Shown: positions 11,533 to 63,100, counted from the first letter of the stretch. The stretch: DNA of 64,000 nt from Ramazzottius varieornatus (GCA_001949185.1 BDGG01000005.1:992001-1056000), one strand, 5' to 3'. Made by a program: numbers and translations. Notes: generated from the sequence alone by a model not told the origin.

Positions 11533-12355
11533 CCTATCGAAGAGCGGTCTTCTGTTCCCTCATGGCTCCACAAAGAAATCAAACCTTCAAGATTCATTGT
11601 CGATCCATACTAGAAAAAAAAACAACTGTCGTTTGACTTACTTCTCAAGGTTTAAACATGTGTAATTCGGCTTCGGATGATTGAGCTTCCGAACCTCATC
11701 AAACGTTTTGTAAAACTTCAAGCAAAATTCAATCTGGAAACAAATCTACGACAGGCGTGAGACGTCCCTAACAGGCTAGCTGGGTTGTTGCTCGCAGGGT
11801 AAAGTATAAATTCCGCCGCGGAATAATGTCATCTGAACCCATCATTTTCTGACCATTCATCCATTTTCGGCTCCATCACGATTAGCGAAGATGGGAATAG
11901 ATGTTGGCGGAAATCTGAAAAGCCCATTGGACGCACTGCCCATCTTGATCATTGTGGCCATCATGCCTCTAGCAATGCATGTGTAAATGCTTGGTTATTC
12001 CCACTATCGCGCCAAGCGCGCCCATCAGTATCAAAGCCAACCAGTAGTTGTGCAGCAGGATGACGCAAAGAAAAACGGGCCCGTGGAGACCGCAGTCTAA
12101 ACTCCCTAACCACAACCTAATTATGAGTTAGGGTTCCGCAGTTGGGCAATCGCCCGGAAAAACGCGTTTCATTCTCGTCATCCTCCCCGTTCTCGGTCCT
12201 GTTAAAGGGTCTGTTAAAGACAATGTTAGGAGTGAAGTGAATAGCCCCAGCTCAGGCCCATGTTTCAGTACAGTTTTGCAAACTTCAGAACCATCAATAC
12301 CGCAATCGGATACCATGAGCGAATGGTTGAACTAGCAGTTCTTGTGATCGAATAT

Positions 12356-12749
12356 TTTTTTCTTCCAAGCGGGGCGGAGTTGTGCGATATAAAACTGAAC
12401 ACAGTTAAAGTTGAGGCCACAATTTGATGGCTTGAAGTCGAGACGAATTTCAAATGCATCTATGCTTCTTCGCACTGCCAACAATTTCGCCGACAGGACG
12501 TGTGTCGGCCACCTTCCTTTTCCGAGATATTTCCCAACTACAGCCCAAAATTAAAAATCTGACTTTAAATTGAAGAATCAGAACCTGTGAGCAAGATCGC
12601 CACATGTCCTATCGGCGACATTGCTGCGGTGGCAAGAAGCATAGATTGCATTTTGAAATTCGTCTCTACGTCAAGCCGTCAAATTGTGGTCTCAATATTA
12701 GACGTGTTCAGTTTCATATCTCACAACTCCGCCCCGCTCGAAATAAAAA
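12356..12749. repeat. Fold-back inverted repeat (~150 bp arms, ~95 bp spacer), MITE-like
   Basis: 12356-12504 is the diverged reverse complement of 12601-12749; the ORF track gives the near-identical peptides LKFVSTSS(H/R)QIV...FSFISHNSAPL on opposite strands. Confidence 0.85.
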
Positions 12750-12929
12750 GGTGTTTTCCCAAGCCGCAGACGCTTTCTTACAACTTGTGATGTACTATAG
12801 TATAATGAAACTAGATACCGAAATCTACGAAATACTACCCCATGGTCTCTATGAAACTAAGGAGCATTAGTAAATACTGGAAGCAGGATGAGTGCGAACA
12901 AAGTTGCAGAGCCAGAAACTCACCGTCAC

Positions 12930-15900
12930 TCACGTCTCTTCCAGTGCTTTATGTAGAAGACTTCTCGGCGGTTTACTCCGCGATCCTTCAGCAGCTTTCC
13001 GCCTGTTGGTTTCTTGCTGACATTCATACTGGTGGATCTCAGCACAAGCATACCGCAGCAAAGCCAGCGGACTGATGGTCACCGTCAAGTGGTAAACCTT
13101 GTCAGAGTGCAGACAGACGGCGATCAGATCGTCCAAGACAAACATACCCTGAAGTCCTCTGGAGAACTTTCTGTCCTTCCACAACTTCCACGTGGTCTCC
13201 CGTCCGCCCAGCATATGAACCAACAGCGCATATGCGTACTTCTTGATATCATTATCCTTACCCTGAGGACCGAAATACGAAGCGATATTCTCCAGGGCTT
13301 TCGTCTTGATGTAGACGTGGTGGCCAGGTCGAAGCTGTGTTCGATCGGGTGCCGGTGTCCGCCAGTACTCTTGTGCTTCTAACAGGGCTACTGTTTCCGC
13401 CTTGGGTCGTTGGTCCAGTTCAGGGAGGTGCCAGCGCGTTATTCCCTTGTCGTACGGCGCCAACTCATTCTTGTAAAACTCCCGTGCGAAAGCTCGAACC
13501 TTGCTGATCGAAACCACTTCCGGTGCTTTGAACAGCTCCACCACGTGTTCTACAAGCAGGAAAACTAAAGCGAACTATGAACCACAGAAACTGTACATTC
13601 GCTCTTACCAATAATAGCTTCGTTAAGAGACGCATCCAAAACCGCCGGACTTCGTCCCGCCTTTCTTCTTTCCAAAGACATCTTCAAGAACGCTTCTTCC
13701 CCACCAACCGCGTGATGAACCAAGATCTTCAAGTAAACGGTCCAGTCTTTGTTTTTTCTCGAAGACTCCGGTCCCATGTATCGTTGGTACTCGGCCAGCT
13801 TGATCTTATCCATGTAGAATTCCGAGTTGAGCGAAAGGCAAGTTCGATGCGGAGCGGGTGTTGTCCAGTAGTTGTAGCCTGGTTTGGCTGGTGGATCTTC
13901 GGCGCCAGGTACCAATGTGAAAAAGCTTGAAGTACTCTCAGGCGGGAACAGGACAGAAGCCATAACGGTTGTGCATTCGGCAAGGTGAAACTTCGGTGCC
14001 CGGCATAGGTGACAGTCCGTTATGTGTGTCCGGAAATCCGACAGGGACATCTCATCCAAACGGAAAGTTTTCTTGGTCCTCACTATCAACATTTAAACAT
14101 TCGATTATAATTACCAGAGACAAAAAATCTGAGATAGAATTATGTGATTCAAAATATGTGATTATGTGATTCAAAATTATGTGCTCCAGCAAACCTGACC
14201 AGATTGTCATCCAAAGTGGCGCAGTCTTCCACTCCGTACCACTAGATAGGTGCGCCACTTGAAAACACGATCTGGTGGAGACTGTTTGCGGAATGCCGAG
14301 CTTCTATCAATAGCCCATTATTAGTAATTCTTACGGTAGACGGCTTCGACGATATCGTCTCCCAGAAGCGCCATTCCGCCTCTTGTGACATGTTTAAGTC
14401 CTTCTCTGTACACATCCATACCGCCAACCACTTCGGCAATGACTTCCATCCCATACCGGCCATAAGGGTTAGCGGTTTGTACTGTCCCGTCCCGGAATCC
14501 TTTCTCTATCTCCGTGAGCCTTTCCTTACTCACGAAGAAGTCGAAGCCGAAAGCGACTTGAGTTTTCTGCGGGTCGGGGTACGAGTTCTGCTTCAAGTGG
14601 TCTCGAAGGAAAAAATCGGACGGTTTCCGACCGCCCACAACGACGCTTCTTTCGTCTTTGTACGACGCATTCATTTTTGGGCGTAGAGCTGCCAAGGTCG
14701 CCTCACGCACATCTCCCGCTTTATCCAGTGAGAACGAATACTGCATATGCTCTACAACGACGAAAGGAACATTAGTATGAATTACTGCAAATATCAATTA
14801 GGTGACTATCGAAGATGTACCAATAACAGCGTCTACGACCCCGCAAACATGGTCCGTCAATTCTTCCTTCGTGATGGGGCAAGTGCCGCTGGCAGAGTAG
14901 CCGAAGCTTCGGACAATTGTCTCACTTCCGCCCAGCAGATGTTCCCCCAGCGCTCTACCATACTTCACACTCTCATCGAACAGCTCTTCTGCCGTTGTCT
15001 CCGAAAAGTTTGGAAGACCATCGAAAAACCCCTTATCGACGAAGACCGTCTTTGCGCATTTCAGCCTTACTCGATCAGGAGCCGACGACATCCAATACTG
15101 TGATGAGAAGATCGTCCCACCGCAAAGCGGGGAATCTCCTGGTACGGAGAGCTGCCCATCGGAAGCTGTGGGAGCCAGTTGACTACTGTCCGACTGTTGT
15201 CCAGACAGTCTGGTTTCTTTTATTTCTTTCCTCAGTAAGGTCCTCACTGCTTTCCGTCTTCTCCTACGCTTTCTTGGTTCCTCGTCGGCAACAACTGAAT
15301 ATTCGACCGGCTCTTTCGAAGCTTCCTCGCTGTCATCCTCCAGTCGTTTCTTCTTGCTCTTCTTATCAGTAAAGGCTTCCTCCGCTTGTCTCTTCCGGAG
15401 CCGTTTGAAAAGCGAGGGGAACGAGCTCTTCTGAAGTGCAGGCTGCTTTCTGGCTTTGGATTGACGTGCTTCTTCGTACCTGTTCTCCTGGTCTTCGACG
15501 AGATGATCCAGCAAGATCTGAAGGTCCAAAGGCGACGTCAGCGTCGTCTTACCCAGCAGTTCCGTCACGAGTGATGTGTCGGCTTTCTGACCACGAACGC
15601 TGAAGGTAGGGATCATGGAGTAGGCTGATGGGTCGGAGGCATCAGTGCGAAACTGTAGGCACAAACACTCGTTAACGACTGCCGTCTGTTCTTTGTAACC
15701 AAGCCTGTAGACTGTGAGGATTCGGTCCTCCTTCCGCACGTCGTACTTCCATCTGGCGCTTTCTTGTCCCACTTTCGGCACAACCAGCATGACGAAATCC
15801 GCGAAGAGACCAGCTTGCCGGTGGAACTTCTCGTAGTCCAATTCCGAATCGCGGCGGCTTTCCTGTGACGCTTTTGTGTTTGAACAAGGAACAGCACCAG

Positions 15901-17972
15901 CGTCGAGGTCGCAGATGTCAGCCATCAACTCGTCCAGCTCTGCATATCTCTTGTGTCGGTGGCTTTGACTGGTGGCTTTGCGAGCTCTATATTCTTCCAG
16001 TAGAGCAGCAAGACGTGCCTTGGCGTACCGAACGTCCAGAGGTATTTCGAAAATCTACAAACAAAAAACATATGTGGAACCAGTCGTTACGCGTATGACT
16101 CGGGAACGTAGGCAGATGAACTGGACCACAAGAATTTTCCAAGTGGCGCACACTTTCGGCTAACAACAAGGAGAACGTGCGCCACTTGGGACAGCAATCT
16201 GGTTTAGTACGTTCAATCGCGTCAGGTTTTACAAAAAGTTGACGAGGCCCTGCCCGCAACTTCACTCGAGTATTCGGAAAAAAATGGCAAAACTAACGCA
16301 CCGACCAGAATATACTCATCGTAGTAAAAGGACCGGACTTAGCTAGCTTACCGCATCGTCATTTATCCTGTCGACGATATCTCTCCACGCATCGCCAGCT
16401 TGCCTTCCCAGTTCATACTGCAACTTGACAGCTTTCGCCAGCAGAACGTCTTTCTCTAAACTGAATTTACGACGTCTTTTTATTTCGCGGCCAGTGTAGT
16501 CCGTTCTCACATTTCCATCTTGTGAAGCTTCGGTAGATTCTCGTTTCAGGAAAATGGGAGCCATACCCAAAATCTGAGCCAAGTGCTCGTCGAGTTTCCC
16601 ATCTCTGTAAGTGTCATCATCTGACGCACTTGCGTTGCGCGCCTTGAACTGGTTCACGAGAACATCGAAGCGATCTCTCACGGCCCGCACATCAAGAGGC
16701 ATTTCGAAGAGCTGCAAGCAAGAAAATTGCAGCAGAATATCATTTCATATTTTGAGGCCATAAACTTACAGGAATAGCATTCAGTTTAGCCACAATCTCT
16801 TTCCATGCTTCGAACTCGAGTCCCTCCGTTTCGAAATCAGGCCGCGACTTGACAGCTTCTGCCAGCAGAATGTCCTTTTCCAAGTTGAACTTTCGACTTT
16901 TTTTCTCTTCACGACCGGCCTTGTCCACTTTTAAGGCTCTGTTTTCTTCCGGTGCGGCAGAGTTACGTCGGGAGGTACTTGAGTCCACGCCTAAAATTTC
17001 CGCAAGCAGCCGATCTAGCTTCCGGTACTTGTCGTCTTTGACCGAGCGGCCGCCATTCGCTTCGCGAGAACTGAATTCTTTCACAAGAACGTCGAAATGA
17101 TTTCTTACTGCTCGCACATCCAGAGGCGTCTCGAAGAGCTATCAAGATACAAAAAAAACTTGAATAGTTAGTTCGACATCGTTAAGGCCCTCGCAAAGTC
17201 GGACCATCTCATGTTAGTCGGTCACCCCCTGATCTCAGGTGTGAAGTCAAGGGTGACCGATAAGGGCTGAATAGTCCGGCTTAGAAAATTTGCCCTCATT
17301 AAGTACGGAACTCCACTCCGCACTTCCCGGGGCCGGAAAGTGGAAACACCTAAATTTGATAACTAAACTGAACGGTAGACCCCGTGAAAACGCATAAACT
17401 TACGGGGATGTCATTCAGAGCCTCGACGATCTCTTTCCATTCTACGTGTGGCACGTCCGACTCGTAGGGATTATGCGACAACACCGCTTCCGCCAACAGA
17501 ACGTCTTTCTCCAAGCCGAACTTGCGCCGGGTGCTCTTTTCTCGAGCAGAATACTCCAGATGTGCAGCCAAGGAAGCAGAGCTCGGATTCATGTCCACAA
17601 TTTCTGTCATTAACTGGTCCAGCTGGTCGTATTTGTACTGGTCGTCTAAGGATCTTGCATTGGTTGCATCGCGCCTGTTGTACTCCTCCAGCAGAGTGAT
17701 GAACCGCAACTGCACCGCACGAGCATCCAGCGGTCTCTCGAAAAGCTATCATCATGAATAATTACGCCGTTGATCAACATCATGTAATAGACTTTGTAAA
17801 CAGTTAATCAACTTACCTCAATAGCGTTCAGCACCTCGGCAATGTCGTTCCACGCATCGTTCTCTCTGCATCCTCCGTACGGATTCCTCGCCTTGACTTC
17901 TTCCGCCAGTAGGATGTCCTTTTCCAGGTTAAAGCGACGTCGATAGCCCTTTATCGTAGGAGCTGCAGCCAT
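12930..17972 (-). CDS. ~1323-aa putative DNA-binding protein: 4x Myb/SANT-like + middle domain + basic linker + 4x BEN-like repeats ('gene A')
   Basis: Exons 17972-17817, 17745-17404, 17138-16770, 16711-16352, 16054-14821, 14751-14335, 14082-13609 and 13549-12930 all have GT-AG boundaries and compatible phases; total 3972 nt, open frame. Domain names are inferred from motif patterns. Confidence 0.8.
14186..14292. mobile_element. Palindromic mini-element, gene A intron 6
   Basis: Core 14217-14257, 27-nt spacer; arms ccagattg / cgatctgg. Confidence 0.75.
16104..16215. mobile_element. Palindromic mini-element, gene A intron 4
   Basis: Core 16144-16184, 27-nt spacer. Confidence 0.75.
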
Positions 17973-19134: not shown

Positions 19135-19969
19135 TATATTATGTTGTATGATGTCATGTCAGGCCGAAGCCAAGGAGGAACGTAATGTGACATAAACACT
19201 TCGACAAGCTGCAGCCTGGATTCTGGAATCTGGAATGGCTTTCTCTTGCATCTCCTCAAAGATCAAAATTCTCTCCCTCCTGTTTTCCGATCCCCTCGGT
19301 CGAGAAAGGCTTCTGGACGCCATTCCAGTCCGAAGAAGGACAACGTAGTGGCGCAACAAGTCGCGCAGAAGCACCTGCACTGCACGGATCAGACCCCGAG
19401 ACCAGGGGGAGGATCATAGGGTAATATCGTAATCCACGCCACCCCCTCAGATTTCGCCCCACGATAGCTCATTCGACAGAACTCGACGAGCTGAATCGAA
19501 TGGCTGTATCCGTTTTGGGAAAATGCATTCTGGGAGGACCGCAGACAAGAAGAAAAATGCCTGTGATTAGAGCTTAGGACGCGGCCATCCCCAACCCCCT
19601 TCCCTCACCTAGACGCTCGTTCACCCTTCCCCACCCCCACCATTACCACTTTGGGAAGAGCCCACCGCTGCAACGGAAACGTGTCTTCCGGCAAAACTAA
19701 TTTCTTCCCCCTGACTCCAAAATGTGTTCTACCGGAAAACGAATGCGGCCATTCGACTCAGCTAGTCAAGATCTGTCGAATGAGCTATCAAGGGGTGAAA
19801 TCTGACGGGGTGACGTAGATTACGATTATACCGATCATCGTATGGTAGGATACCTTCGTCGCGCTTCCTGTCATCCTCTCGTTGTAAGCATCTGCAGGCG
19901 CAGCGTGCTCGACTTATCTTCCGATTGTGAACCTTACTGTTGTCGGCAATATGACAGATATCTTGATAG

Positions 19970-22888
19970 CCCTCCACCAACCCACTGGACAAGAATGCTT
20001 TAAAGAAAGGCTCATTGTCCTTCTGGAAGTTTACCCATCCCGACAGGTGATCTCCGTGAATTCTACAGACGGTTAATAATATTGGTCATCAGTCTAACGG
20101 CGGGCCTCATCGATCCTCGATGGATGAAATCTTAACGAAGAAGTCGGGCTGCGCCCTAGAGCCCGGACGAGGAGCGAAGAATATCCGTCCTTCCCTACCG
20201 TTCTCTCACGGATTCCATTCCCACGACATGCACGATGCTGATTTCTTTGCGGACTTTGTCATGCTGTGGTTGTGCCAAAGTTTGGACAAGAGAGCGCCAG
20301 ATGGAAGTACGACGTCCGGAAAGACGAAAGAACGCTGACGGTGTACAGTTTGAGCTATAATGACCAGACCGCTTTCGTCAGTGAATGCTTGCATTTACAG
20401 TATTGTTCGGATTCACTCGACCCGTCTTCCTACTCACTCATCCCCACGTTCATATCCAGAGGACGCCTAACTGAGCCGTCCCTCGTGCTGCGTCTGCTTG
20501 GACGGTCTTCGATCACGTCGCCGATGGACCTTCAGACCGTGCCGGACCATCTGGACAACGAGTGCGAAAACAGATATCGTGTTCGAGAACTCGATGTAGC
20601 GGAAGTGCCGCTGCTGTGTAATCTGCAGGTCGTCCGCAGTGGAAGAAAAAGAAAGCCTGTAAAACATAGGTCGGCAGGGTTTCCGGGTGGGGCTAAGGCC
20701 AAAAAGCGGAAAGTAGGCGAGAAGCCATGTACGAAAGAAGCGCCAGATATGGTTGGAACTCTGTCGACTATCCTGGACATAGCAAAGGATGCAATAGCGG
20801 AAGTGTCCACAGAGTCTCCCCACTCCGTAAGGCGCTTGTCGACAGGACCAGCGCATCCACATTCGGGCGGAACAATCATGTCGTCCCAGTACTGGACGAC
20901 TTGTGCACCCAATCGCGAAAGACTCAACAGCGACAAACCCATCTTTGTCGACGCTGAGTTCATCAATGGGCTGCCGGACGTAGTCAATGTTGCGGAAGCA
21001 TTGTGCTGTGACGAGACTATCAGATATGGGCGGGTGCTGCTTGAGCATCTACTGGGCGGAAGTGGGGCTGTCAGACGAAGCTTCGCTTACTGCTCCAGCG
21101 GTACATGTCCCATAACGAAGGAGGAGCTGACGAAGCACGTCATCAATCAAGTTCTCCAGGCAGTTCTCGGTACATGTGTGACATCTGGAACCCAGTGTCT
21201 CTGCTACGAAATACACGATGTTTTTGTTACTGTTGCAGAGCATATTCAACGCTTGTTTGGGACGGGTAGGACAGAAGACGTTCGCGATACAATCCTGTCC
21301 ATTCTGCAACCGAAAATGACAGCTTCGTACGCTGAATTGCCCACTGTCCTCGCGGTCGGTCGGGTCCCGTCGCACACTTTCCTTCGTCCGCATCTGAAGC
21401 ACAACTCCTACCCAGACCCGAAGAAAACTCAACTCGCACACGGTTTTGACTTTCACGTGAACACGAGAAAGCTCCAAGAGATAGTGAGACGCTACACGGA
21501 GGGAGAGCAGAAGCACCTGAAGAACCGCAATGGCAACTTTGGGATGGACGTGGTTGCGGAGCTGGTTGGCGATCTCGACGTGTAAGGGAAGGACTGAAAC
21601 ATGTCCCGAGAGGCTCGATGGACCTACTCGGCGAAGATATTCCAGAAGCCATTTACCGTAAGCTTCAAATGGTTCCTAAGAGTTTCGTTCGGCTTCTGAT
21701 TGACCGTAACTTCCTTATCCGTTCAGGAAGGGCGAAGAAAGTGTTCGATATGGCCAGCAGCGTTACGTTACCTGATTTCCGAAAGCAGATCGCGGAGTGC
21801 AAACGTTCGCGAGGGAACAAAAGTAACGTCGACGAGGGCGGAAAGGTCATGGCTTCAGTTTTGTTCGATCCAAACCCGAAGGCCTGCTGTGGGCGTATTC
21901 CTGACAGCGATGACCCACCAGCGAAACTTGGGTGCAACTACTGGACGACACCCACCCCACATCGAACCCGCCTCTCGCTCAACTCGTCCTTCTATATGGA
22001 CACGGTCAAGCTGGCCGAGTGCCAACGATACATGGGACCCGAATCTGCCAGCAAGAAGAAAGACTGGCATATATACGCGAGGATGCTGGTACAACACGCA
22101 GCCGGTGGGGAAGCAGCCTTCTTTAGAATATGCCTCGAGAGAAGAAAGGCGCAGCTGAAGCTGAATGTTCTCGACGCTCCCATCAGAGACGCCATCATCG
22201 GTATGGTGAGCTCAAACCGCCGTCTGTAGCATGTACAGCAACCTAACTCACTTCTGTTGATGTTGTAGAACATGTGGTCGACCTGTACAAAGCACCAGAT
22301 GCCGTACCTGACAAACTCGTTCGTCCCTTCGTCCTCAATTTCGTGCATTATGACATAAAGCTGTATGACAAGGGAATAACACGATGGTACTTCCCTGAAC
22401 TGGACCAACGACCCAAGGCGGAAACAGTAGCCCTGTTAGAAGCACAAGAGTACTGGCGGACACCGGCACCCGATCGAACACAGCTTCGACCTGGCCACCA
22501 CGTCTACATCAAGACGAAAGCCCTGGAGAGCATCGCTTCATACTTTGGCCCACAGTCCAAGGAGAACTGTATCAAGCAGTACAGTTGCGCCTTGTTGATG
22601 CACATGTTGGGCGGCATGAAAACTGCCTTCAACCTGTGGCAGGGCAAACAGTTCACCGACGGACTTCGGGGCATGTTCCTGCTGGATGACTTGATTGCCG
22701 TATGCTTACACTCAGATGAGTTGTTTCATCTGGCTGTATCCGTCAGTCCGCAGGCTTGTTTGCAGTTCTCCTCTGTTAGAATGATGCGCCACGGTCGGAA
22801 TGAAGTTAGGAACGAAATATGCGCCGCTAACGGAGGTCGACCTCGAGCGGCCAGAAGCTTGTTTCACTTCGCTCTCGGTGTGTCGTAG
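19970..22888 (+). pseudogene. Frameshifted paralog of gene A ('gene B'): decayed Myb-like exon, middle domain, 4x BEN-like
   Basis: Colinear with gene A and shares its intron positions. Lesions: +2 insertion near 20266 (ATGCTGTGGTTGTG vs ATGCTGGTTGTG), 1-nt deletion near 21585 giving TAA, and a broken PLDKNA..KERLIVLLEVY exon near 19970-20030. Confidence 0.8.
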
Positions 22889-23089: not shown

Positions 23090-24750
23090 CCATTGATTAG
23101 GAAAAGTTGGTCGTACACATGGGTGGAATCCTTAGCTCGGTTCTTGGTACATTGTTCTGTGTCCTTACGTGATTTAGTGATGGGAAATTTCCATCTTTGT
23201 GCTCTTCTTTGCAGGGCATATGGGGAGCTCATTTCCGTTGGATCTTACGGGGCACCTGTCTAAGGAAGTTATGGTACTGTTAGGGCCCAACATCGACAAG
23301 TCTTATCGAAATCTGAAGGAGCTCAACACGAAGCACCGCCGAGCATCCGACAGCTACCTTCGCAATCATCTGAAGAAGAGCAGTCATTCGAAGAAGGGCA
23401 ATTTTGAAGTCGCTCATGGCTTGGACTTCTTCATCGAGAGCACAAGTATGACGAAATCGAGATTCGGCATAAGGAGAAAGCAGCCAAAGTACACGAGAAG
23501 CCAAAACTCCGCTACTTGCACGCCCGATTTGTCTTTTATGTCATTCTGGAGGTGATCGGAGGAAAGAAGGGATGGGCTGAAGGGGTTCGTGGTTCAATGC
23601 AGGTGTTCGGGAAAGACCTCACGGAAGCTGCTTTCCGTAAGCAACTGCACACTGATCGATGAAGTTCCTCCGAATGATCAGTAAGCTGACAGAAAATTAG
23701 ACTGATTATATATATAGGTTAGTTCCCTTCTTCTTTCCAGAAAGAACGCAGAAAACGCTTAAAGTGGACGAGGACTACACACTTGACGATTTGTCGAAGG
23801 TGTACAGCGAACACTGTCAGGCGCGACTGATACACCCGGAATTTGCGCCAGCTGATGTGGGTGAGCAAGTGATGGCTCCTGTCCCGTCTCTCCGGCTGTT
23901 GCTGAAACATCTGCAGACCCACCACCGGAATATAGGCGCAACTACTGGACCACACCCGCCTCAAATCGAACTCGTCTGTCGCCCAACTCCTCCTTCTCCG
24001 TAGATACGGTGAAGCTGGCCGAGTACCATGGGCCCTGAGTCCGCACGGCAGAAGAAAGACTTTCATCTGTACCTCGTACACTTGGATGCTGTTACGACAC
24101 GGCATCGGTGGGGAAGAGAGGTTCATGCAAAGCCTTCTGCAACTCTGAAAAGCCGGCAAGCTGTACAATGGCCCGATCAATACTGAGGCTCCGCTGGCAG
24201 CTGCCATTCTCGATATGTCAGACCTAGAAACAGGTCGGGAAATTCTGACTTCCAACATGAAACTTTTGTCTGATTTCGCCTACAGCACATTGAGGACCTC
24301 TTCAAAAATCCCGAAAACATTACCACGAAGAAGATGACAGCTTTGGTGGTCGGCATCTGCAAACGGAAACTGATACAAACCGATAAAAGAGTTTCCCGGA
24401 GCTCGATCGACGTCCAAAGCCGAAAGCAGCACTTCTGATGAAAAAACCAAGAATATTGGCGGGAAGCGGTGCCTCATCGAACGCAGCTTCGACCTGGACA
24501 CCATGTCTACATTCGCACAGAGATACTGGAAAGCTTTTCACTCCATTTCGGACAATCTAAAGAAAACCACAACAAGAGATACGCTACTTATTCACATGCT
24601 GTGTGGGCTAGAAACAGCGTGGACGGTGTGGAATGGCAGACAGTTCTCCGACGGTCTTGGGGAATGTTCCTCTGCGATGATTTGATAGCGGTATGTTTGC
24701 ATGCGGATGGTGTCATTAGATTGTTCCTCCGGAGCATGGGATGAACCGGC
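23090..24750 (+). pseudogene. Third, more decayed paralog of gene A ('gene C'), BEN-like region only
   Basis: Fragments YLRNHLKK..EVAHGLDFFIE, NYWTTP..NRTRL, PHRTQLRPGHHVYIRTEILE and GMFLCDDLIAVCLHAD in shifting frames with stops. Confidence 0.8.
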
Positions 24751-25521: not shown

Positions 25522-27128
<1,607 letters not shown>

Positions 27129-38118: not shown

Positions 38119-38460
38119 ATGGAAAGGATCAAGCACCGCAAGAAATTTCGCCTGGACAGCTTCGCCGATTTCGTGACGCTGACTGCCGAATAGGGTACAG
38201 GAAACCGCAACATGGAAATACGACGTGCGTGCAGACGCTAGAATGCTGACAGTATACAGGCTGACAGACAAAGAAGGAAACGCCATAATAACCGAGTGCT
38301 TACGCCTCGAACTCTGTTCTGTTCCTCCCGACAAACACGAATCATCCTTACAATACTTCGCTCCTACCTACCGCTCCCGCGGACAGAAGGTTGAGTCACC
38401 GGTTGTTCGGAATGTGATTGGAAAGCGTATTCTAACATCCCCCGCCGAGCTGCGATCAAC
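38119..38460 (+). pseudogene. Dispersed fragment of the gene A family (middle domain)
   Basis: MERIKHRKKFRLDSFADFVTL / frameshift / VQETATWKYDVRADARMLTVYRL...ECLRLEL...PTYRSRGQK...IGKRILTSPAEL matches gene A FADFVML..WKYDVRKEDRILTVYRL...LLGKTTLTSPLDL. Confidence 0.75.
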
Positions 38461-40609: not shown

Positions 40610-43158
40610 ATGGATGGAGCAAGCAGGAAAGAGAATCCCAAGAGGAAGCTGGATCGACTGCAGAACAAAGTCAGCAAGCTGAAAGCCTTCTACGAGTTGA
40701 CGAAGCCGAAACGTAAGTCTTCCTGCTCCTAACTCAGCAGCCCTAAGTATCGTGTCGTTAACCTGGTTATGTAACTTTATAGCTGTTGAACCTGTGCGGG
40801 GCGGTGGCGATGATGAGCGGAAGCAAGAAAGCTCGCCCGACTCAGGCGTCGAAGTTGAACCGAAGTCACATCCGAAGATTCTCCCCGAAGATGAACTGGA
40901 GCATCTTCGTGCACGTCTACGTGCTCAACAGAAAGAGAAGCTTTCGCGACCGGTTCTGTTTCAGACTACCATACCCTCAATGTTACGGCCTGCCGATGTG
41001 CGGCAGCTGTTAATGTACGCTCTGGAAGGTGGCGGTGCTTCGGGAATTAAGCCAGAATGGTGCTCACTCATTCGATGGCAGAAGATCAGCCAAGTTATCG
41101 TCGTGTCGGTGGAAAATATGACCAGAGTCGACTGGGACAAGTATTCGCTGGCAAATCGTCAACTGAGGACGTTCTTGGAGGTATATGGACCATTGGAACC
41201 GCAAGACGAGAAACACCTGTCCAAATGCTTGCTTGAATATCCGCTCAGCATAACACGTCTGGAGAAGATGGGCAGAGGCACGAAGGAACGTCAAATATCG
41301 CAAGGTGATGTTTTTGGCATGTGCGCAGCGTTCTCGCAAAGCGGAAGATGTGATCGAGAGAAAGCCACGGGAGGATGATTATTTCCTCACTGTCTCGACC
41401 GAAGCGCCATATGACGTCTCGATACCGAACTCAAACTAATGTGGTGCTGCAGTGACGTCATGCGTGACTGTTGTTTGTTGGTACTGGGAAATTCACAGCA
41501 CCGTCAGCGTAGTTAGTCGTCCCGAAATCATCCAGCAGCAAAGAATGTTTGCTCTTTTGTAGGTTCTTTGTTTCCGATGTACAAAGCTTACACGCAAATC
41601 TCTCTACCCCCTCCACAGGACGACATTGGGGCAGACTGCCGGTTCGACCTGATGATGAGCATCGAGAGAATGGCCATGGAAAGATTCCCCATCCCGACAC
41701 ATCAGAATGGTCTTGACATTAGCTACTACGTCCCCACGAAAGGTGCTTACGCTCCCGTCACCTCGACGAGTCCTCTTTTCGGTGTCGACTGCGAAATGTG
41801 CATGACAAGCTCACGCAGACACGAACTCACGAGGATATCCATCGTCAACGAAACCCTCCAGGTGAAAATACCATCTTCAATCGCTTATTACTGTTTCCAA
41901 AATTGAAATCTTAGCAAATCTAGTTTTTTAGGTTGTGTACGACACGTACGTGAAGCCCTTTAACCCGGTTCTGAACTACCTGACAAAGTACAGTGGTATC
42001 ACGAAAGCCATCCTCGATCCAGTCAAGACTCGCCTCCACGACGTACAAGAAGCCATCCGGAAACTACTTCCACCCGACGCCATTCTGTGCGGGCAGTCGC
42101 TGAACGGTGATCTACACGCGCTCGAGATGATACATCCTTACGTGATTGATACTAGTGTCATCTACAACCTAACCGGAAGTCCGAGAGCCAAGACAGCTCT
42201 CAAGACCCTTTCGATGGTCTTCTTAGGAAAGAAGATCCAGGGAGCGGATAAGCGAGGCCATGACTCTGTGGAAGACAGTCGAACTACAATGGAGCTGGTC
42301 CTGTTGAAACTAAGACATGGTCCACAGTTTGGTGATGTTTCTCGAGGCTGGGAAATGCCGAGAAGCACGCCAGACAAAGCTGCAGAAAACAGTACCGACT
42401 TAATCAAGAACGAACCAGTCAACGATAAACCAGTAAAGCCTGACGCTGCCGATGAGCTCTCATTTAAAAACTCACTTCCCCCTTCTCAACCTAAGCCGTT
42501 CATAGACTCAAAGTTGAAGGCGGAATCTTTGGAGGAATTTTCAGGGAAGCCCGGTGAGAAAAGAAAAGCCGAAGAATCCCTGCCTGGAAAAAAGAGGAAG
42601 GCGCCAGAAACTCTCGCCGCTGATTTTGTCCAGTTTACGCCAGATACTCCTACCACAAATTGTCACTTCCGGGAAAGTATGCTGAAGTGTGCGGAACGAG
42701 CGAAGAAGACGACCTACGTCGTCGGCAGTAGTGACTACATTCAAGAAGTATCGACGAAGGACCCCAAGCGAGTCCACCACGTCGATTCGACGAGGACGGC
42801 TGTAAAGAACGCTGTCGAGAACCTGCCTAGTCATGACTTTTCCTTCGTCGAGCTCTCGTTGCGGATTTCGGAAGATGAGCATAGGCAACAGGTAAGAAGT
42901 TGCACTCGGGACTTTGATGGTGTTGTAATGCAGAGCCAAAGTGTAGCGCTTTTGCAGAAGAGGACCAAGTCGCTGATCAAGCAAGTACTGAAGCTGTTTT
43001 CAACTGCCGCTGACCGGTCGCTCTGCATGCTGGTGTTGTCTGGTAACCTAGCTTCTGAGTCCAGTGGTATTTGTTGCGCCGCTGTCAAAAACTCGATCAA
43101 GTTTGAAGCTTTAATGTCGTCAGATACGACTTCCGGTCCAGCGGAGGACCCAGAATAA
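40610..43158 (+). CDS. REXO5: DEDDh RNA exonuclease, REXO5/REXO1-like
   Basis: SPLFGVDCEMCMT, ELTRISIV, YDTYVKPFNPVLNYLTKYSGIT, ILCGQSLNGDLHAL, VIDTSVIY, GHDSVEDSRTTMELVLLKL. First exon MDGASRKENPKRKLDRLQNK from 40610. Confidence 0.85.
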
Positions 43159-57591: not shown

Positions 57592-59870
57592 TCAAGCTGC
57601 CTTTGCAACAGCTACAAAAGGTATCTGGCTAGTTTCTACACACTGAAAATTATAGCAAGCTTTCCCACCCTTGGGATCACATAGCGTACCCGGAAGTGCC
57701 GGACCAAATTTCAGACTGTACGATGATCGAGGTTCGGCAACACTTTTCAGCCTGCATTCCAGAGCTTGGCACATGTCATTGCCCACACGGGTACCGGAGG
57801 CGAAAACCTCTTTGATATCTTGTCTTCTCCATTTTTTCGTAGTCATCCAGAATTCGCCGAAGAGAAAGTTGCACAAATTGCTTGGATCAATAGGTTTAGA
57901 CACCACACCTGCGGAAAGAGAGCCGAATAATCATCAAAATCAACAGCTATGTAATAATTCGTCCCAGTGACGTCACTGCGAAACCCAACGGTCAGAAGTG
58001 ACGAAGCGCGCGAGTTTGGTAGGTAAGCACAGCAACAAAGCGTCTGACCGTAGTAAATATGAGATCACACCTTTTATTGCTGTTTTGAATTCCAAGCTTG
58101 GGTTCGTGCGATCTGGTTCATCTTTCACCAAACAGCTGCTGCGGTCCTTCAAGGCCAATTTTAGTTCCTTGATGGCACACGGTGTGAGCTGCGGTGTGAT
58201 ACCTTTGGTAGCCCATGCGTTGCCGCTCCACGAAACGGATGACATGAAGGAGGACCTATTGGGATCTTTGGCTTCAAAGGGACAGGTACTGTCTTCTTCG
58301 TGATGGACACCAATGGAATGGAAGATTTCGTGAGCAGCAGAGAAGCTTGGTATGGCAGTGTTCATTTCAACGATGCTACAATGTCGCCGCTTTTGACAGG
58401 TGGTACCGATCCATGCCAGGCCGATGCAGTCGTTCAGTCGCTGCCCTTCCGGAATGTGTCCATGGCGCTTCGGCTGCTCGATACCCCCTGGAAACTTGAA
58501 TGGCTGCGGAAGATCCAACTGTGCTCCAGATCGCCTGTTCGATTGGTAAGCCACCAGACGCTTGGAGTTCACGTCGTAGATATCCAGGTAAGTCAAAGTC
58601 TGTGGAATGAAAGAAAATCGTGCAGTCTCCGTCGTCGATAGCATGAAAAATTTGACTTGACTCCAAAGATGATCGCAAGACTGCACATAGAATTGACAGT
58701 TGTGCTGTCGGTAAAACAATCAAACGAAAGGCGTATCGGGTTAAGCTGCTGGCATATTCTGCAATCTAGAACCCACGAAAGGCGTCCGCTATATTTTCGT
58801 ACCTGGACTTGGTCGTAGTCGATATTATTGTATGGTCCAGCACAAACGTTATCCAGGTACTGTTCCGCATGTTCAACTGCTCCCAAATCGTTTCTCTCTT
58901 GGGTGAAGAACCCGAGAGACTGAAGAGCCAGAGTCAACTTGACTTTCCTCCACAGGGTTCTCTCCTTATACATCAACTGGACGTCGTTGTAGAAACCGAT
59001 AACATAAAAGATCTGTTCTTCCTCTTTGGTGAATCCCCACTTCTTCAGCACTTCATACACACTATAATCAATCAGCACACCCAGCTTCATCGAGGCTTTT
59101 ATTGCTTTCTTCTTCTTCTTCTTCTTTTTCTTCTCGAACTGAAAAGCTTCTTCCTCGTCCTTTTCAGATACGTCCTGCGTCAACAGACTCGGTTGCATCC
59201 GGCTGACTTCGAACACGATGTGAGTAGCTAAATCTAGATCAGCCTCTTTCATGTCGAAATATGCCGCGAACTTTCGTACGAAACGTTCTTTTACAGGAAC
59301 TATTCGTAATAAACGGTCGGGTCCTTGGATCAAGCCGCGCATCCCATCTTTCGATATGGAGAACGCGCTGTTCGCTGCTTCGGCATCTTCACCGTCATCA
59401 TCAGCGTCAAAGTTATTCTCGGCGAAAGCATCGCTAGCCTTCGCTAAATAGTGTCTGCTGTAAAGATCCCTGTCTACGAGGTGTGTTCTACCTTCCTCGC
59501 CACTCTTGTCGTCGAAATACTTTACTGAGAACTCTTGCGATAACAGCCGATCATTCCGGTATGCATTGATTGTGTACTTCCGGTTGAAAGCTGTTATGTC
59601 AAATTCTAGTTTTGCGGGGAAGACCCAGTCGGTTTTATGTACGTAGGACGGGAAGTCACGATAAGCATCGTGGTAGGACGGAGAGGTTAGATCGTAGAGC
59701 GGCACTTCCGACGGATGGGATACACCGAAGTGATGAGCAAGATCCATTTGGTCCATATAGGTATGTATGTCATATTGAGGATTGAATGGACCCGCCAACA
59801 AACTATCGGTCAAAACAAGCAAGCAGAAAGATAAACCATATTCGGCTACAAAATTAACGTTAGCTTTCAT
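57592..59870 (-). CDS. Secreted reprolysin (M12B, ADAMTS-like) metalloprotease 1
   Basis: Signal peptide, prodomain, GLAWIGTTC, AAHEIFHSIGVHHE zinc motif, SFMS Met-turn, and Cys-rich tail GPALPGTLCD..KACYNFQCV. Confidence 0.85.
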
Positions 59871-60120
59871 TGCTCATTTTCTGAAAGTTCTTCTTTCCAG
59901 CAGCGGCAGTGTTCATTTCAATGCACTTCTGACCTCCACGAAAGAGCAAGGTCACAAACAGCGGGATCATTCATAGCAACCTCCACATTCGGCGAAGCAA
60001 TAACACGAAGGAAGAAGGATAAGAAGAAGAAGAATAAGAAGCAGAAAATTATGGAAGACTGATTCACACAAAACACTTCGAGAATTCGAAAACAGCATTG
60101 TAACTAGCCACATCACAACT

Positions 60121-63100
60121 CTATCCCAGCACTGGGTTCTTGGACGCAGCAGAAGTCGGGTCAGCCTTTGGTACACATTTAAAATTAAAACATACTTTTT
60201 CCCCAGATTTGTCACACCGCGTAGCAGTAAGAGCTGGGCCAAACACCCATTTAGATGGAGACGCTTTCGAATCTTTTTCCCGAGCCCCACACACTAAAGA
60301 TTTACAGATTTCTGGTAAGTCGGGTTTCTCGGCAAAGACTTGCGGGTCCTTCCAGCGCTTAGTCCTCTGGAACAACGAGTAACCCTTCGCTTTACAAACT
60401 TCATCTGCCGTTAGAACCTTCTTATCCAACACACCTAAAACAACAAGAGGAACAATTCAAAATAGGTCCAGCATAGTACTTCGACAAAAGTATGATATTC
60501 AATGTTTTAATACTTTTGAGATGTTTTTGATAGAACTTTCCACTATCACTTGCTGGACTCTTGATCAGACACTTCCCATCCCCTTTCAGGTAGTTGACCA
60601 ATTCCTGAACAGCGCATGTGGACACCGAAGGCGGCTGGGCAGACTCGCTCCACCCGGACTTCATCGGCTGATTGGGTACCACGAAAGACGTCGGGTTCTT
60701 CGCCAACGGACACCCATTGGAGCCTTCATGCTGCATCCCCAAAGCATGCGCCAACTCGTGAGCAATGTTGATACTGGGAGTAAAGGAAGCCATCTCAATC
60801 ACCGAACAGTGATGCTTGAACGAGCAGGTCGAGCCCAATAACGCCAGCCCGACCGCATCGTACACTCTCTGCTCTTCCGGTATCTTGCTCGAATCTGTGA
60901 TATCCCCTGAATACCAACTTTTCGTTGTTGTTTTGTTATCAAATTGCACATCTTTTTCGTTTTCTAGGTCGAGAGTCTCGTCGATGGATCTTCTGCGAAG
61001 TCCAGCTGTTGGGTTCAGTTCGAACAAGTCCAGCATGGTCAAGGCTTGGACGTGGTCGATGTTCTTCCTGGTTGGGCTGTTCAGCGGACCATTACACAGA
61101 CTGTGCAGGTAGTTGGTGGCGTATGGGTCGGGTTTCACGTCTTTTCCCTTTCCGTCTGCGATGAACTCGACAGCACCAATCTCGATAGTCATATCCACCT
61201 TTTGTGAGATGGGACTAGCTTTGTAGAAGGCTTGAACCTCGTTATACATGGCGAGAACCAGGAAGGTCTTCGTGTCTTTGTTCTTGATACCTATACCTTC
61301 CAGCGCGGAATAGTAGCTGTAATCCACAACCGGGTAAATAGAGATGACAGCACGGAGGGGAAAAGTGTCCAGCTTGGGCTTCTGCGTGGTAGTGGTGGGT
61401 ACTATTTTTGGTGTTGTCGGTTTTTTTGTGGTAGTGGTGGTTGTTCTCGTCGTAGTTTTGACCGTTGTTGTTCTTTTCCGTGTATGTGAAGGTTTCCGTT
61501 CTTCTTCGTTGCCACCAACGTTTTTCCTGCGCTTCTTGTGGTTGGTCTTTCTGTTGTGGTGTTCTCGATTAACCGGCTTTCTTGGCCGCTCTCCAGGAGG
61601 AGGGGGAGGTCGACGGGAACTGCTCTCCTCTGGTGGTGGGCGAGGTTTTCGAGGTCGTCGTTCTTGATTTGGTGGGCGCTTCCGACGCGGTGGCGGGCCG
61701 CCATCCCGGTTACCTTCTCGTCGTTCGGGTGGTCGCTTGCGATCGGGAGGACGGCCTTCTCCGGGGCGTGGCGGTGGACCTCGTCCTTCGAGATTATCGG
61801 CTGGTGGACGCTGTGGTGGTGGCGGTCTGTGGTGAGGAGGGAGAGGTGGCGGTAACGGTGGTTCGTGACGTGGTGGTGGTGGTGGTGGTGGTGGTGGTGG
61901 TGGTGGAGGTGGTGGTGGCGGTCCGCGATGAGGTGGCGGAGGTCCCGGCATGACAATAGGTGGTAAGTTGATGGGCCCGCGACCATGATGGCCTGGAGGT
62001 GGTCTGTGGTGTGGGGGGCCAGGAGGTGGACCAAAGGGTGACTGGTGCGGTGGTGGTCGGTGTGGCATGTTCCGAGGACCATCTCTGTCTTCGTGTCGTG
62101 GCGGCGGCCCATAAGCGTTCGTTGGACGAGCCGATCGGCCATCTTCCCGGTGTGGACGTCGAGGGTCATCGCGATCGCGGTCGCGAGAAGGTTCTGATGC
62201 TGATCTAGCGTAACCGCCTTTTGGACGAACTGACCTGCTCTCTTCTCGGTCACGAGCGTTGCTTTTTCGTGGTCGATCGCGGGATGGTTCCGATTGGGAG
62301 TTTGCGTAACCACCTTTCGGACGAACTGATCGCGGACCGTCACGTCGATCATCATATCCACGCTGAAATTCAAAGCCTCCTTGCTGCTCTTCTTCCGGAT
62401 AGTACAGGCTTCGACTGTACCTCTCGTGAAGATCCCGGACTGTTTTCGAGGCGACCGGGTAAATCAGGTGCAGGTGTTCGAATTGTTCGGGGGTATCGAA
62501 GTTGGCCAAATATCGTCGGGCGACATTGGGTCGTAACGGCACAAGGCGATACAGTTGGCTGTCTAGATCCAACAAGCCACGAAGTCCGGCTGCCGAAGTT
62601 GACAATGCCCCACGTGTAACCTCGGTAGACCTTTCATCTTCCGGGTATATTCGCTTGACTCGGCTTAGGTAATGACTACGTGTGACACTGTGCGGCGGGA
62701 TATGGGAAGATATGCGACCAGACGAGCTGTGGTGAACCTGATGCCAACAACAAGGAAACCTCTGGGCGGTGAAGATAACCACAGCGGAATAGGATATGAA
62801 TGGAACGGATGAAAATTAAGCATTTCGAGTTGTGGCGCACCTGATAGTAAAATTCGGGAGAAACAAGGACGTCGTTCCTGGTGGCGTGGATAGAGTATTT
62901 CGTATTGAACACTTCGATGTCGAAATGGAGTTTCGCTGGATGAACCCAGTCGCGTTCCTGTGCGTGATGAGGGAAGCTACGGTAAGGTGCAGCATAAGAA
63001 GGAGTGGATAAGTCGTAGTCGGGAACACGATCTACAGAGTCGACTCCAAAGTGGAACTGGAGATCACCAACTGTCATATACTTGTGAAGATCATACTGTG

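What the first reader, a model, noticed from the sequence alone, without database searches (positions are those of the whole stretch)
12930..17972. Hidden 8-exon gene encoding a 4x Myb/SANT-like + 4x BEN-like multivalent DNA-binding protein
Seen: eight separate ORFs splice in frame into ~1323 aa. The key link is an exon starting at 16054 (IFEIPLDVRYAKARLAALLEEY...), upstream of the listed 15928 ORF. The N-terminus has four repeats RRKFxLEKDxLLAxxV...W.eI...lN|LFE.PLD.RAV..rF..L..ef...LD.L.aeI. The C-terminus has four ~130-aa repeats YW.t.aP.Rt.L....v(F/Y)v...L...Y...L..h..GG...A(V/I). Between them are a globular domain and NLS-like runs (KKSKKKR, PRKRRRRRK). Established: the first pattern resembles Myb/SANT-like (trihelix) domains of the kind carried by PIF/Harbinger transposons; BEN domains are DNA-binding repressor/insulator modules, and BEND3 has four. 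Inference: a lineage-specific chromatin or transposon-control factor with an architecture I do not recognise from any described protein.
Basis: partly seen in the sequence, partly recalled or inferred. Interest (0 to 1): 0.85.

Follow-up and report, generated by a model that had tools for sequence, protein, structure and literature searches.

The report
Tardigrade Myb-plus-quad-BEN nuclear protein gene
The eight-exon gene is real and transcribed, but it is already annotated as an uncharacterised Ramazzottius varieornatus protein; it joins four Myb/SANT-like repeats to a pairing domain and four very divergent BEN-fold repeats, and it belongs to a gene family found so far only in this tardigrade lineage.

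Summary
Spliced contigs from four studies show all seven GT..AG junctions, including the key 16352->16054 link, and give a 1323-aa product.

The gene is not hidden. It is public as hypothetical protein RvY_10178 of the tardigrade Ramazzottius varieornatus (GAU99135.1, 1327 aa; GAU99136.1, 1226 aa).

- **Myb/SANT-like:** supported. Pfam Myb_DNA-bind_3 scores 37.7 bits against a cut-off of 23.6.
- **BEN-like:** Pfam BEN and PDB sequence searches find nothing. An AlphaFold model of the last repeat (pLDDT 91.6) has BEN domains as its five best matches among 48,161 PDB chains (Z 7.9-5.1; next unrelated 4.9). The four repeats are homologous to one another.
- **Middle domain:** weakly RWD/UBC-like. 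A homodimer model passes its controls (0.38 against 0.15).
- **Family:** the "middle domain + four BEN-like repeats" unit occurs at about 15-20 loci in this genome. I found no named relative in any other organism. Only this member carries the Myb array.
- **Against "multivalent DNA binding":** most repeats are net acidic. Only Myb4 and BEN4 are basic.

Other first-stage notes of this scan describe the same stretch (s1-795003, s1-812411).

Verdict: a new variant of a known kind, of moderate interest.

The parts
17817..17972 (-). Exon 1. Start ATG at 17972-17970. Encodes helices 1-2 of Myb/SANT-like repeat 1. The 5'UTR reaches at least 17996.
   Evidence: junction 17817->17745 in four runs; in-frame stop upstream at 18056-18054 with no earlier ATG.
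17404..17745 (-). Exon 2. Encodes helix 3 plus the acidic helix of repeat 1, a linker, and helices 1-2 of repeat 2. Contains the internal Met used by public isoform 2.
16770..17138 (-). Exon 3. Encodes the end of Myb-like repeat 2 and the start of repeat 3.
   Evidence: the best Pfam Myb_DNA-bind_3 stretch (residues 258-315 of P0030) spans the exon 3/4 junction.
16352..16711 (-). Exon 4. Encodes the end of repeat 3 and the start of repeat 4.
14821..16054 (-). Exon 5. Encodes the end of Myb-like repeat 4, the middle domain, a basic/acidic linker with NLS-like runs, and BEN-like repeat 1 (from about 15139).
   Evidence: The key junction 16352->16054 is present in all four runs.
15455..15877 (-). 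Middle alpha+beta domain, conserved in all family members. The fold is RWD/UBC-like and a homodimer is predicted.
   Evidence: AF2 pLDDT 84.5. Fold matches are to Mediator Med17-type, Listerin RWD, kinetochore RWD and E2 chains at Z 5-7, with none standing out. Homodimer score 0.38 against best control 0.15.
15344..15364 (-). NLS-like run KKSKKKR.
15251..15277 (-). NLS-like run PRKRRRRRK.
14335..14751 (-). Exon 6. Encodes BEN-like repeat 2, the most divergent; it lacks the YW..PAP motif.
   Evidence: Junctions; hhalign against the R3 and R4 profiles gives 92% probability, E about 1e-6.
13609..14082 (-). Exon 7. Encodes BEN-like repeat 3.
12930..13549 (-). Exon 8. Encodes BEN-like repeat 4 with a basic C-terminal tail, then the stop TGA at 12932-12930.
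   Evidence: AF2 pLDDT 91.6, pTM 0.83. BEN domains are the top five of 48,161 PDB chains and the top four in the second look. The paralogues' tails are also basic.
12849..12923 (-). Optional 75-nt intron in the 3'UTR. It is spliced in X9 and X14 and retained in X1 and X2.
   Evidence: tables 5 and 8.
20266..22888 (+). Head-to-head inverted paralogue (middle domain plus four BEN-like repeats, no Myb array) with a frame break near its start. A further partial copy lies at 23199-24744. This is context, not part of the gene.
   Evidence: inverted repeats I1-I4, 71-79% nucleotide complementarity.

Best explanation
This is RvY_10178 of the tardigrade Ramazzottius varieornatus, an expressed eight-exon gene for a 1323-aa nuclear protein.

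Shown: four Myb/SANT-like repeats; a middle alpha+beta domain; a charged linker with two NLS-like runs; and four homologous repeats whose modelled fold is that of the BEN DNA-binding domain.

Inferred mechanism: the protein enters the nucleus through the basic runs and pairs through the middle domain. It then contacts DNA or chromatin mainly through its basic modules, the terminal BEN repeat with its basic tail and Myb repeat 4. The acidic repeats would serve as protein or histone contacts. The result would be a sequence-directed repressor- or insulator-type factor, as known BEN proteins are.

Its C-terminal two thirds is one copy of a lineage-restricted, fast-evolving family of 'middle domain + quad-BEN' genes. 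This member alone gained an exon-duplicated Myb array at its 5' end.
For: - **Gene and transcript:** all junctions are present in four studies, and the public models are identical from exon 1 or 2 onward.
- **Organism:** hits are named RvY_* and their contig lengths equal those of G000.
- **Myb:** PF12776 at E 4.2e-9, 37.7 bits against a cut-off of 23.6, in three stretches; PF13873 at 20.5 bits, just under its cut-off. The language-model neighbours that carry a family are Myb_DNA-bind_3/4 or MADF, though all score under 0.9 and are leads only.
- **BEN fold:** the exon 8 model has pLDDT 91.6 and shows two short strands followed by six helices. This is the topology described for BEND3-BD4 in PMC8887127.
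- **BEN, unbiased scan of 48,161 chains:** NACC1 Z 7.9 (rmsd 4.1, 105 aligned), BANP 7.6, Bsg25A 7.2, BEND3-BD1 6.5 and BEND6 5.1; the next, unrelated, chain scores 4.9.
- **BEN, other searches:** Foldseek PDB puts NACC1 BEN first at probability 0.96. In the viral library the high-probability matches are bracovirus BEN proteins at 0.92-0.93.
- **Repeat homology:** hhalign 92-98% for five of six pairs.
- **Pairing:** homodimer score 0.38 against best control 0.15. This mark was reached by 21 of 30 proteins solved as pairs of one chain and by 0 of 23 solved as single chains. On eukaryotes it was reached by 17 of 29 (animals 7 of 16). The runs agree in at least 90% of contacts and the partner's pLDDT is at least 56.
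- **Family:** 57 six-frame matches to exon 8, 21 matches to the middle domain, and four full-length public paralogues without any Myb hit.
Against: - No sequence method links the C-terminal repeats to BEN. This covers Pfam on the exons and on the whole protein, PF10523 over the genome, a 44-sequence profile against PDB sequences and a profile against 5.8e9 proteins.
- Z values of 7-8 are middling for helical domains by the tool's own caveat.
- Only repeat 4 was folded.
- No Myb repeat was folded.
- Net charge: Myb cores -2, -5, -1 and +3; BEN repeats -7, -1, +1 and +5. Acidic SANT-type or BEND3-BD1-type modules may not bind DNA.
- The middle-domain fold match has no standout, and the dimer is only a model.
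- The contigs are labelled 'RNA?' by guess. That they are RNA is inferred from the intron-less joints.
- No binding or function data exist.
Confidence: 0.6

Rival explanations
1. The protein is a chromatin scaffold rather than a multivalent DNA binder. Most Myb/SANT-like and BEN-like repeats would be protein- or histone-interaction modules, like SANT domains or BEND3-BD1 (which binds PICH). At most one module would touch DNA, or none would.
For: Three of the four Myb cores and BEN repeats 1-2 are net acidic or neutral. BEND3-BD1 has the BEN fold, binds a protein partner and selects no DNA motif (PMC8887127), and it is among the structural matches at Z 6.5.
Against: BEN4 is net +5 and has a basic C-terminal tail that is conserved as basic in eight paralogues. 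This is the region BEND3-BD4 uses for base contacts. Myb4 is net +3 and opens with KRRRK.
Confidence: 0.25
2. The gene derives from, or is still part of, mobile or viral DNA. It would combine a PIF/Harbinger-type Myb-like DNA-binding protein with a BEN array of transposon or viral origin. The family would spread as, or act against, selfish elements.
For: - PF12776 is the Myb type common in Harbinger-associated proteins (my own knowledge).
- The genome holds at least 136 DDE_Tnp_4 matches.
- The family is multicopy and clustered, and some copies carry stops.
- Strain differences are 23 nonsynonymous to 10 synonymous.
- In the viral library the best match, and the only matches with high probability, are bracovirus BEN proteins.
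Against: - Paralogues are only 37-62% identical in protein, so the copies are old rather than recent.
- The gene has seven spliceosomal introns and ordinary UTRs.
- No terminal inverted repeats bracket it.
- No DDE_Tnp_4 match lies inside the window; the nearest is 12.6 kb beyond its end.
- A profile of the Myb repeats finds nothing in eight Harbinger loci nor elsewhere in the genome.
Confidence: 0.1
3. These are two adjacent genes (a Myb half and a BEN half), or the ORF chain is a chance artefact.
For: None found. Before the read evidence, the 297-nt intron 4 was the only weak link.
Against: The joint 16352->16054 is present in all four runs, inside contigs that also carry exons 2-8. The public models are the same.
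Confidence: 0.01

Closest known systems
BEND3 (vertebrate quad-BEN repressor)
   Same: It has four tandem BEN-fold domains in one nuclear protein. The last domain has a basic C-terminal segment, as does the DNA-binding BD4 of BEND3. BEND3-BD1 is a structural match at Z 6.5.
   Different: There is no detectable sequence similarity. BEND3 has no Myb/SANT array and no RWD-like middle domain. The tardigrade repeats carry a YW..PAP..R motif and a phase-1 intron inside the last helix. No orthology is implied.
NACC1/NACC2 (BTB-BEN) and the Drosophila BEN-solo factors Insv, Elba1/Bsg25A and Elba2
   Same: They are the best structural matches: NACC1 at Z 7.9-8.5, Insv at 7.7 and Bsg25A at 7.2. They share the logic of an oligomerisation module plus a BEN DNA reader: BTB in NACC1, Elba3 bridging in ELBA, and the predicted dimerising middle domain here.
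   Different: They have a single BEN domain, a different pairing module, no Myb repeats, and are recognised by Pfam BEN.
Myb/SANT-like proteins of the Myb_DNA-bind_3/4/5 and MADF group, including PIF/Harbinger-associated DNA-binding proteins
   Same: The Pfam PF12776 match is above its cut-off. The repeat shows a three-helix pattern with conserved F, W and F positions.
   Different: Here there are four tandem copies, each split by a phase-0 intron and each followed by an acidic helix. The cores are mostly acidic. There is no partner transposase and no similarity to Harbinger loci of the same genome.
RWD/UBC-like domains (Listerin RWD, kinetochore CENP-O/P and Ctf19-Mcm21, Mediator Med17 C-terminal domain)
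   Same: An N-terminal helix, a four- to five-stranded antiparallel sheet and C-terminal helices; Z 5-7. Many of these domains pair through the sheet, as in the predicted homodimer.
   Different: There is no standout match and no sequence similarity. No E2 catalytic HPN...C motif is apparent in the sequence.

Membership tests
Myb/SANT-like (Pfam PF12776 Myb_DNA-bind_3) | Profile match above the curated gathering score | tested here: met
   P0030 (the public protein of this gene) scores 37.7 bits against a cut-off of 23.6, E 4.2e-9, in three stretches. P0028 scores 28.6 bits. Single exons give no hit because each domain is split by an intron.
Myb/SANT-like (Pfam PF12776 Myb_DNA-bind_3) | Three-helix bundle fold | not tested
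   Each repeat spans an intron, so no window reference covers one whole repeat. The public proteins (1226 and 1327 aa) exceed the 1200-aa limit of the fold tool. Only the sequence pattern and weak language-model neighbours are available.
Myb/SANT-like (Pfam PF12776 Myb_DNA-bind_3) | DNA binding through a basic recognition helix | tested here: inconclusive
   The net charges of the four cores are -2, -5, -1 and +3. Only repeat 4 looks basic. There is no binding assay.
BEN domain (Pfam PF10523) | Profile match above the curated gathering score | tested here: not met
   No hit at E up to 10 on the exons or the whole protein. The genome scan with PF10523 does not touch this locus. A family profile against PDB sequences finds no BEN chain.
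BEN domain (Pfam PF10523) | BEN fold: two short strands followed by about six helices, superimposable on solved BEN domains | tested here: met
   The repeat 4 model has pLDDT 91.6. The five best of 48,161 chains are all BEN domains, at Z 7.9-5.1 with 77-105 residues aligned; the next chain scores 4.9. The second look gives Z 8.5 with rmsd 3.0 and 96 of 113 residues aligned. The topology agrees with PMC8887127. Repeats 1-3 are assigned by homology only.
BEN domain (Pfam PF10523) | Sequence-specific DNA binding through a basic C-terminal segment | not testable with these tools
   Repeat 4 and its paralogues end in an Arg/Lys-rich tail. This is suggestive only.
BEND3-type quad-BEN proteins | Four BEN domains in tandem, with orthology to BEND3 | tested here: not met
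   Four homologous units are present. No sequence relation to any named BEN protein was found in 1.84e9 representatives or 5.8e9 clusters. The arrangement is analogous, not orthologous.
RWD/UBC-like fold | Alpha+beta sandwich superimposable on RWD/E2 domains, clearly above background | tested here: inconclusive
   Z 5-7 to many RWD, UEV, E2 and Med17 chains with no gap to unrelated rows. Foldseek E is 0.2 or more.
PIF/Harbinger transposon gene pair | The Myb-like gene lies next to a DDE_Tnp_4 transposase, within terminal inverted repeats | tested here: not met
   None of the 136 DDE_Tnp_4 matches lies in C5:992001-1056000. No flanking inverted repeats were found. The Myb profile finds nothing in eight Harbinger loci.

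The most novel reading that the evidence does not exclude
That element has 767 exact copies, and its 11-mer arm has about 7000, with copies in introns 4 and 6 of this gene and in introns of paralogues. This would be a lineage-specific protein-and-site system for genome-wide insulation or repeat control, built from BEN domains too divergent for sequence profiles to recognise.
Probability: 0.08. Interest if true: 0.8.

Novelty: new variant of a known kind. Interest (0 to 1): 0.45.

Why it matters
BEN domains are a young and still poorly mapped class of DNA readers. This work shows that a whole tardigrade gene family, public only as 'hypothetical proteins', carries BEN-fold repeats that Pfam misses. 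One member combines them with a Myb/SANT array and a probable pairing domain, an arrangement I found in no named protein.

For tardigrade biology it offers a set of lineage-restricted, apparently fast-evolving nuclear factors to test in chromatin organisation or repeat control. For domain annotation it is a case where only structure prediction recovers the family.

It does not open a long-standing question, and the gene model itself is not new.

Tried and rejected
- **Pfam:** no hits on single exons, apart from noise. No BEN hit on the whole protein.
- **Genome scans with Pfam models:** PF10523 over the genome gives one weak hit elsewhere. PF12776 over the genome in six frames gives nothing; its controls were also silent, so this is uninformative.
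- **PDB by sequence:** nothing, with the whole protein or with the family profile.
- **ESM Atlas:** no usable hit for exon 8. For one Myb repeat it gave only leads under 0.9.
- **PKD hit:** a bacterial PKD-repeat protein (P0020) matched the middle domain at E 2e-4 in six stretches. I treat this as repeat-inflated chance.
- **Harbinger origin of the Myb repeats:** no support.
- **Vestigial half-Myb upstream of the neighbouring paralogue:** E 1.3, rejected.
- **Literature:** no paper names RvY_10178 and none links tardigrades with BEN expansions. The 2008 BEN paper is not held.
- The sources of the unnamed ENA and Logan relatives (P0001, P0003, P0015, P0032, P0035-P0038) therefore remain unknown.
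Searches ran exon by exon by reference, or on the public proteins P0028 and P0030 that a tool returned.
  - No Myb repeat was folded, for the reasons given in the membership test.
Full report
**1. The observation**

On the minus strand, eight open segments chain through canonical GT..AG introns. Every run shows the same seven joints: 17817->17745, 17404->17138, 16770->16711, 16352->16054, 14821->14751, 14335->14082 and 13609->13549. All have CT..AC ends on the plus strand, which is GT..AG for the gene.

- **Contig span.** Single contigs carry exons 2-8 (X2, X14) or exons 3-8 plus the 3'UTR (X9).
- **RNA status.** The runs are labelled 'RNA?' by guess. Contigs that lack all seven introns are what shows they are RNA.
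- **3'UTR intron.** X9 and X14 also splice a 75-nt intron, 12923-12849, which starts after the TGA. X1 and X2 retain it.

**2. Whose gene it is**

The hits carry names of Ramazzottius varieornatus, and their contig lengths equal those of G000. The gene is public.

It then adds MDRQ, through a donor two bases before the TGA and an acceptor near 11610.
- GAU99136.1 (RvY_10178-2, 1226 aa) starts at a Met inside exon 2.

So the gene is not hidden. It is named 'hypothetical protein' and I found no paper on it.

**3. The N-terminal repeats**

The four units hit each other at tblastn E 1e-6 to 1e-26. Each is cut by a phase-0 intron at the same place, after the second helix and before (L/I)FE.PLD.

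- **Pfam.** Because of the introns, single exons give nothing. The public full-length protein matches Myb_DNA-bind_3 at 37.7 bits (cut-off 23.6, E 4.2e-9, three stretches) and Myb_DNA-bind_5 at 20.5 bits (cut-off 21.7).
- **Language-model neighbours.** The neighbours of one repeat that carry a family are Myb_DNA-bind_3/4 or MADF, all below the 0.9 level, so they are leads only.
- **Fold.** I could not fold a repeat. No window reference spans one whole repeat, and both public proteins exceed the tool's length limit.
- **Charge.** The cores are mostly acidic: net -2, -5, -1 and +3.

**4. The C-terminal repeats**

Each unit is roughly one exon. A phase-1 intron sits after (D/E)A(V/I)(I/Y), inside what the model shows as the last helix. 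Profiles built from paralogues of each unit match each other at 92-98% hhalign probability for five of six pairs; R1-R2 gives 52%.

No sequence method sees BEN. An AlphaFold2 model of exon 8, built with a 44-row family alignment, has pLDDT 91.6 and pTM 0.83. It shows two short strands followed by six helices, the topology described for BEND3-BD4 (PMC8887127).

| Search | Result |
|---|---|
| Foldseek, PDB | NACC1 BEN first (probability 0.96, E 0.23); Insv BEN also listed |
| Second look at Foldseek's matches | NACC1 Z 8.5 (rmsd 3.0, 96 of 113 aligned), Insv 7.7, NAC1 6.6, BEND6 4.4, then 3.9 |
| Foldseek-independent scan of 48,161 PDB representatives | NACC1 7.9, BANP 7.6, Bsg25A 7.2, BEND3-BD1 6.5, BEND6 5.1, then 4.9 |
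| Viral library | High-probability matches are bracovirus BEN proteins (0.92-0.93) |

The Z values are middling for a helical domain. What carries the case is that the top of three different searches consists only of BEN domains, and that most of each BEN chain is aligned. I file the repeats as BEN-fold, with family membership by sequence not met.

Net charges of the four units are -7, -1, +1 and +5. The last unit ends in an Arg/Lys-rich tail that is also basic in eight paralogues.

**5. The middle domain and linker**

Residues encoded by 15877-15455 are conserved across the family. They fold with pLDDT 84.5 into a helix, a five-stranded sheet and two helices.

- **Fold matches.** Listerin RWD, kinetochore RWD pairs, Med17-type domains, UEV and E2 chains at Z 5-7, with no standout. 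This makes it RWD/UBC-like, weakly.
- **Homodimer model.** It scores 0.38 against a best control of 0.15.
  - *Calibration:* the mark was reached by 21 of 30 proteins solved as pairs of one chain and by 0 of 23 solved as single chains; on eukaryotes by 17 of 29, animals 7 of 16.
  - *Run quality:* the runs agree in at least 90% of contacts and the partner's pLDDT is at least 56.
  - *Interface:* it lies on the sheet, residues 44-98. This supports pairing but does not show it.
- **NLS-like runs.** The two are at 15344-15364 and 15251-15277.

**6. The family**

- **Copy number.** Exon 8 has 57 six-frame matches in the genome and the middle domain has 21. They cluster on C1 at 7.64-7.67 Mb, and on C3, C5 and C8.
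- **Public paralogues.** Four full-length ones (893-1027 aa, 37-50% identical to one another) have the middle domain plus four repeats and no Myb hit.
- **Myb array.** A profile of the Myb repeats and an exon 4 query find nothing outside this gene, so the Myb array is particular to RvY_10178.
- **Neighbour.** An inverted head-to-head paralogue lies 2.3 kb upstream (20266-22888, 71-79% nucleotide identity) with a frame break near its start. A third partial copy follows it.
- **Distribution.** Exon 5 has 21 hits among 1.84e9 representative proteins, and the family profile has 9 among 5.8e9 clusters. The one outsider, a bacterial PKD-repeat protein, I treat as chance (section 9); the rest are R. 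varieornatus proteins or unnamed ENA/Logan entries.

**7. Constraint**

X9 and X14 differ from the reference at 33 listed coding sites, 23 nonsynonymous and 10 synonymous, with no frame break. Seven nonsynonymous and no synonymous changes fall in codons 758-790, in BEN-like repeat 1. This points to weak constraint, fast evolution or gene conversion. The numbers are small and six differences were not listed.

**8. Reading**

Shown: one transcribed gene; Myb/SANT-like membership by profile; a BEN fold for repeat 4; homology of the four repeats; a lineage-restricted family.

Inferred: nuclear import, pairing through the middle domain, and DNA contact mainly through BEN4 and Myb4, with the acidic repeats acting as protein or histone contacts. 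This would make it a repressor- or insulator-type factor by analogy with BEND3, NACC1, Insv and Elba. In BEND3, BD4 is the sequence reader and BD1 binds a protein.

Rivals: a pure scaffold role (0.25), a mobile-element or viral origin or role (0.1), and two separate genes (0.01; contradicted).

**9. Limits**

Joined sequence was used only in the form of the public proteins returned by the tools.
- The bacterial PKD hit (P0020) I regard as chance.

Noticed in passing
window 16141-16187 (intron 4), 25958-26004, half sites at 14250-14260 (intron 6), 31665, 32230 and 53644; genome-wide: A palindromic element, AAGTGGCGCAC-N25-GTGCGCCACTT, has invariant 11-nt arms and a variable spacer. The window holds 8 arms against 0.03 expected. 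The genome holds 767 exact full palindromes (control 0) and 7002 arms (control 20), or 0.125 per kb. In 113 kb of family loci there are 31 arms, or 0.27 per kb, mostly in two loci. It may be a MITE end or a protein-binding site. Another first-stage note (s1-795203) links it to the BEN family.
   Followed up: partly
window 20266-22888 (+) and 23199-24744 (+): An inverted head-to-head paralogue of exons 5-8, public in part as RvY_10180 (330 aa), has a frame break around 20250. A further degraded partial copy with stop codons follows it.
   Followed up: partly
window 14822-14920 region, codons 758-790 of the gene: Seven nonsynonymous and no synonymous differences separate the reference from runs X9 and X14 within 33 codons of BEN-like repeat 1. 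This could be positive selection or gene conversion from a paralogue.
   Followed up: no
window 12357-12454 / 12652-12749 and 19420-19516 / 19736-19832: Two hairpin-forming inverted repeats of about 98 nt (85-86% complementary, loops about 200 nt) lie just downstream and upstream of the gene. They look MITE-like.
   Followed up: no
window 38183-38455 (+): An isolated fragment is similar to the family's middle domain (44% identity to exon 5 residues 92-179). It is far from any BEN-like exon.
   Followed up: no
G000 C3:1518000-1538000 (L010, L014): Tandem arrays of many BEN-like units lie without the middle domain, about 30-37% identical to repeat 4. They may be a gene or genes with more than four repeats.
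   Followed up: no
window 57973-62782 (-), 25950-26561 (-), 41935-43158 (+): The neighbouring genes are ordinary animal genes: a reprolysin/ADAM-type metalloprotease with its propeptide, tryptophan 2,3-dioxygenase, and an RNase T-type exonuclease.
   Followed up: no
genome-wide: At least 136 six-frame matches to the PIF/Harbinger transposase domain DDE_Tnp_4, many with long open frames. One lies 1.3 kb from the paralogue on C3 at 2.876 Mb.
   Followed up: partly
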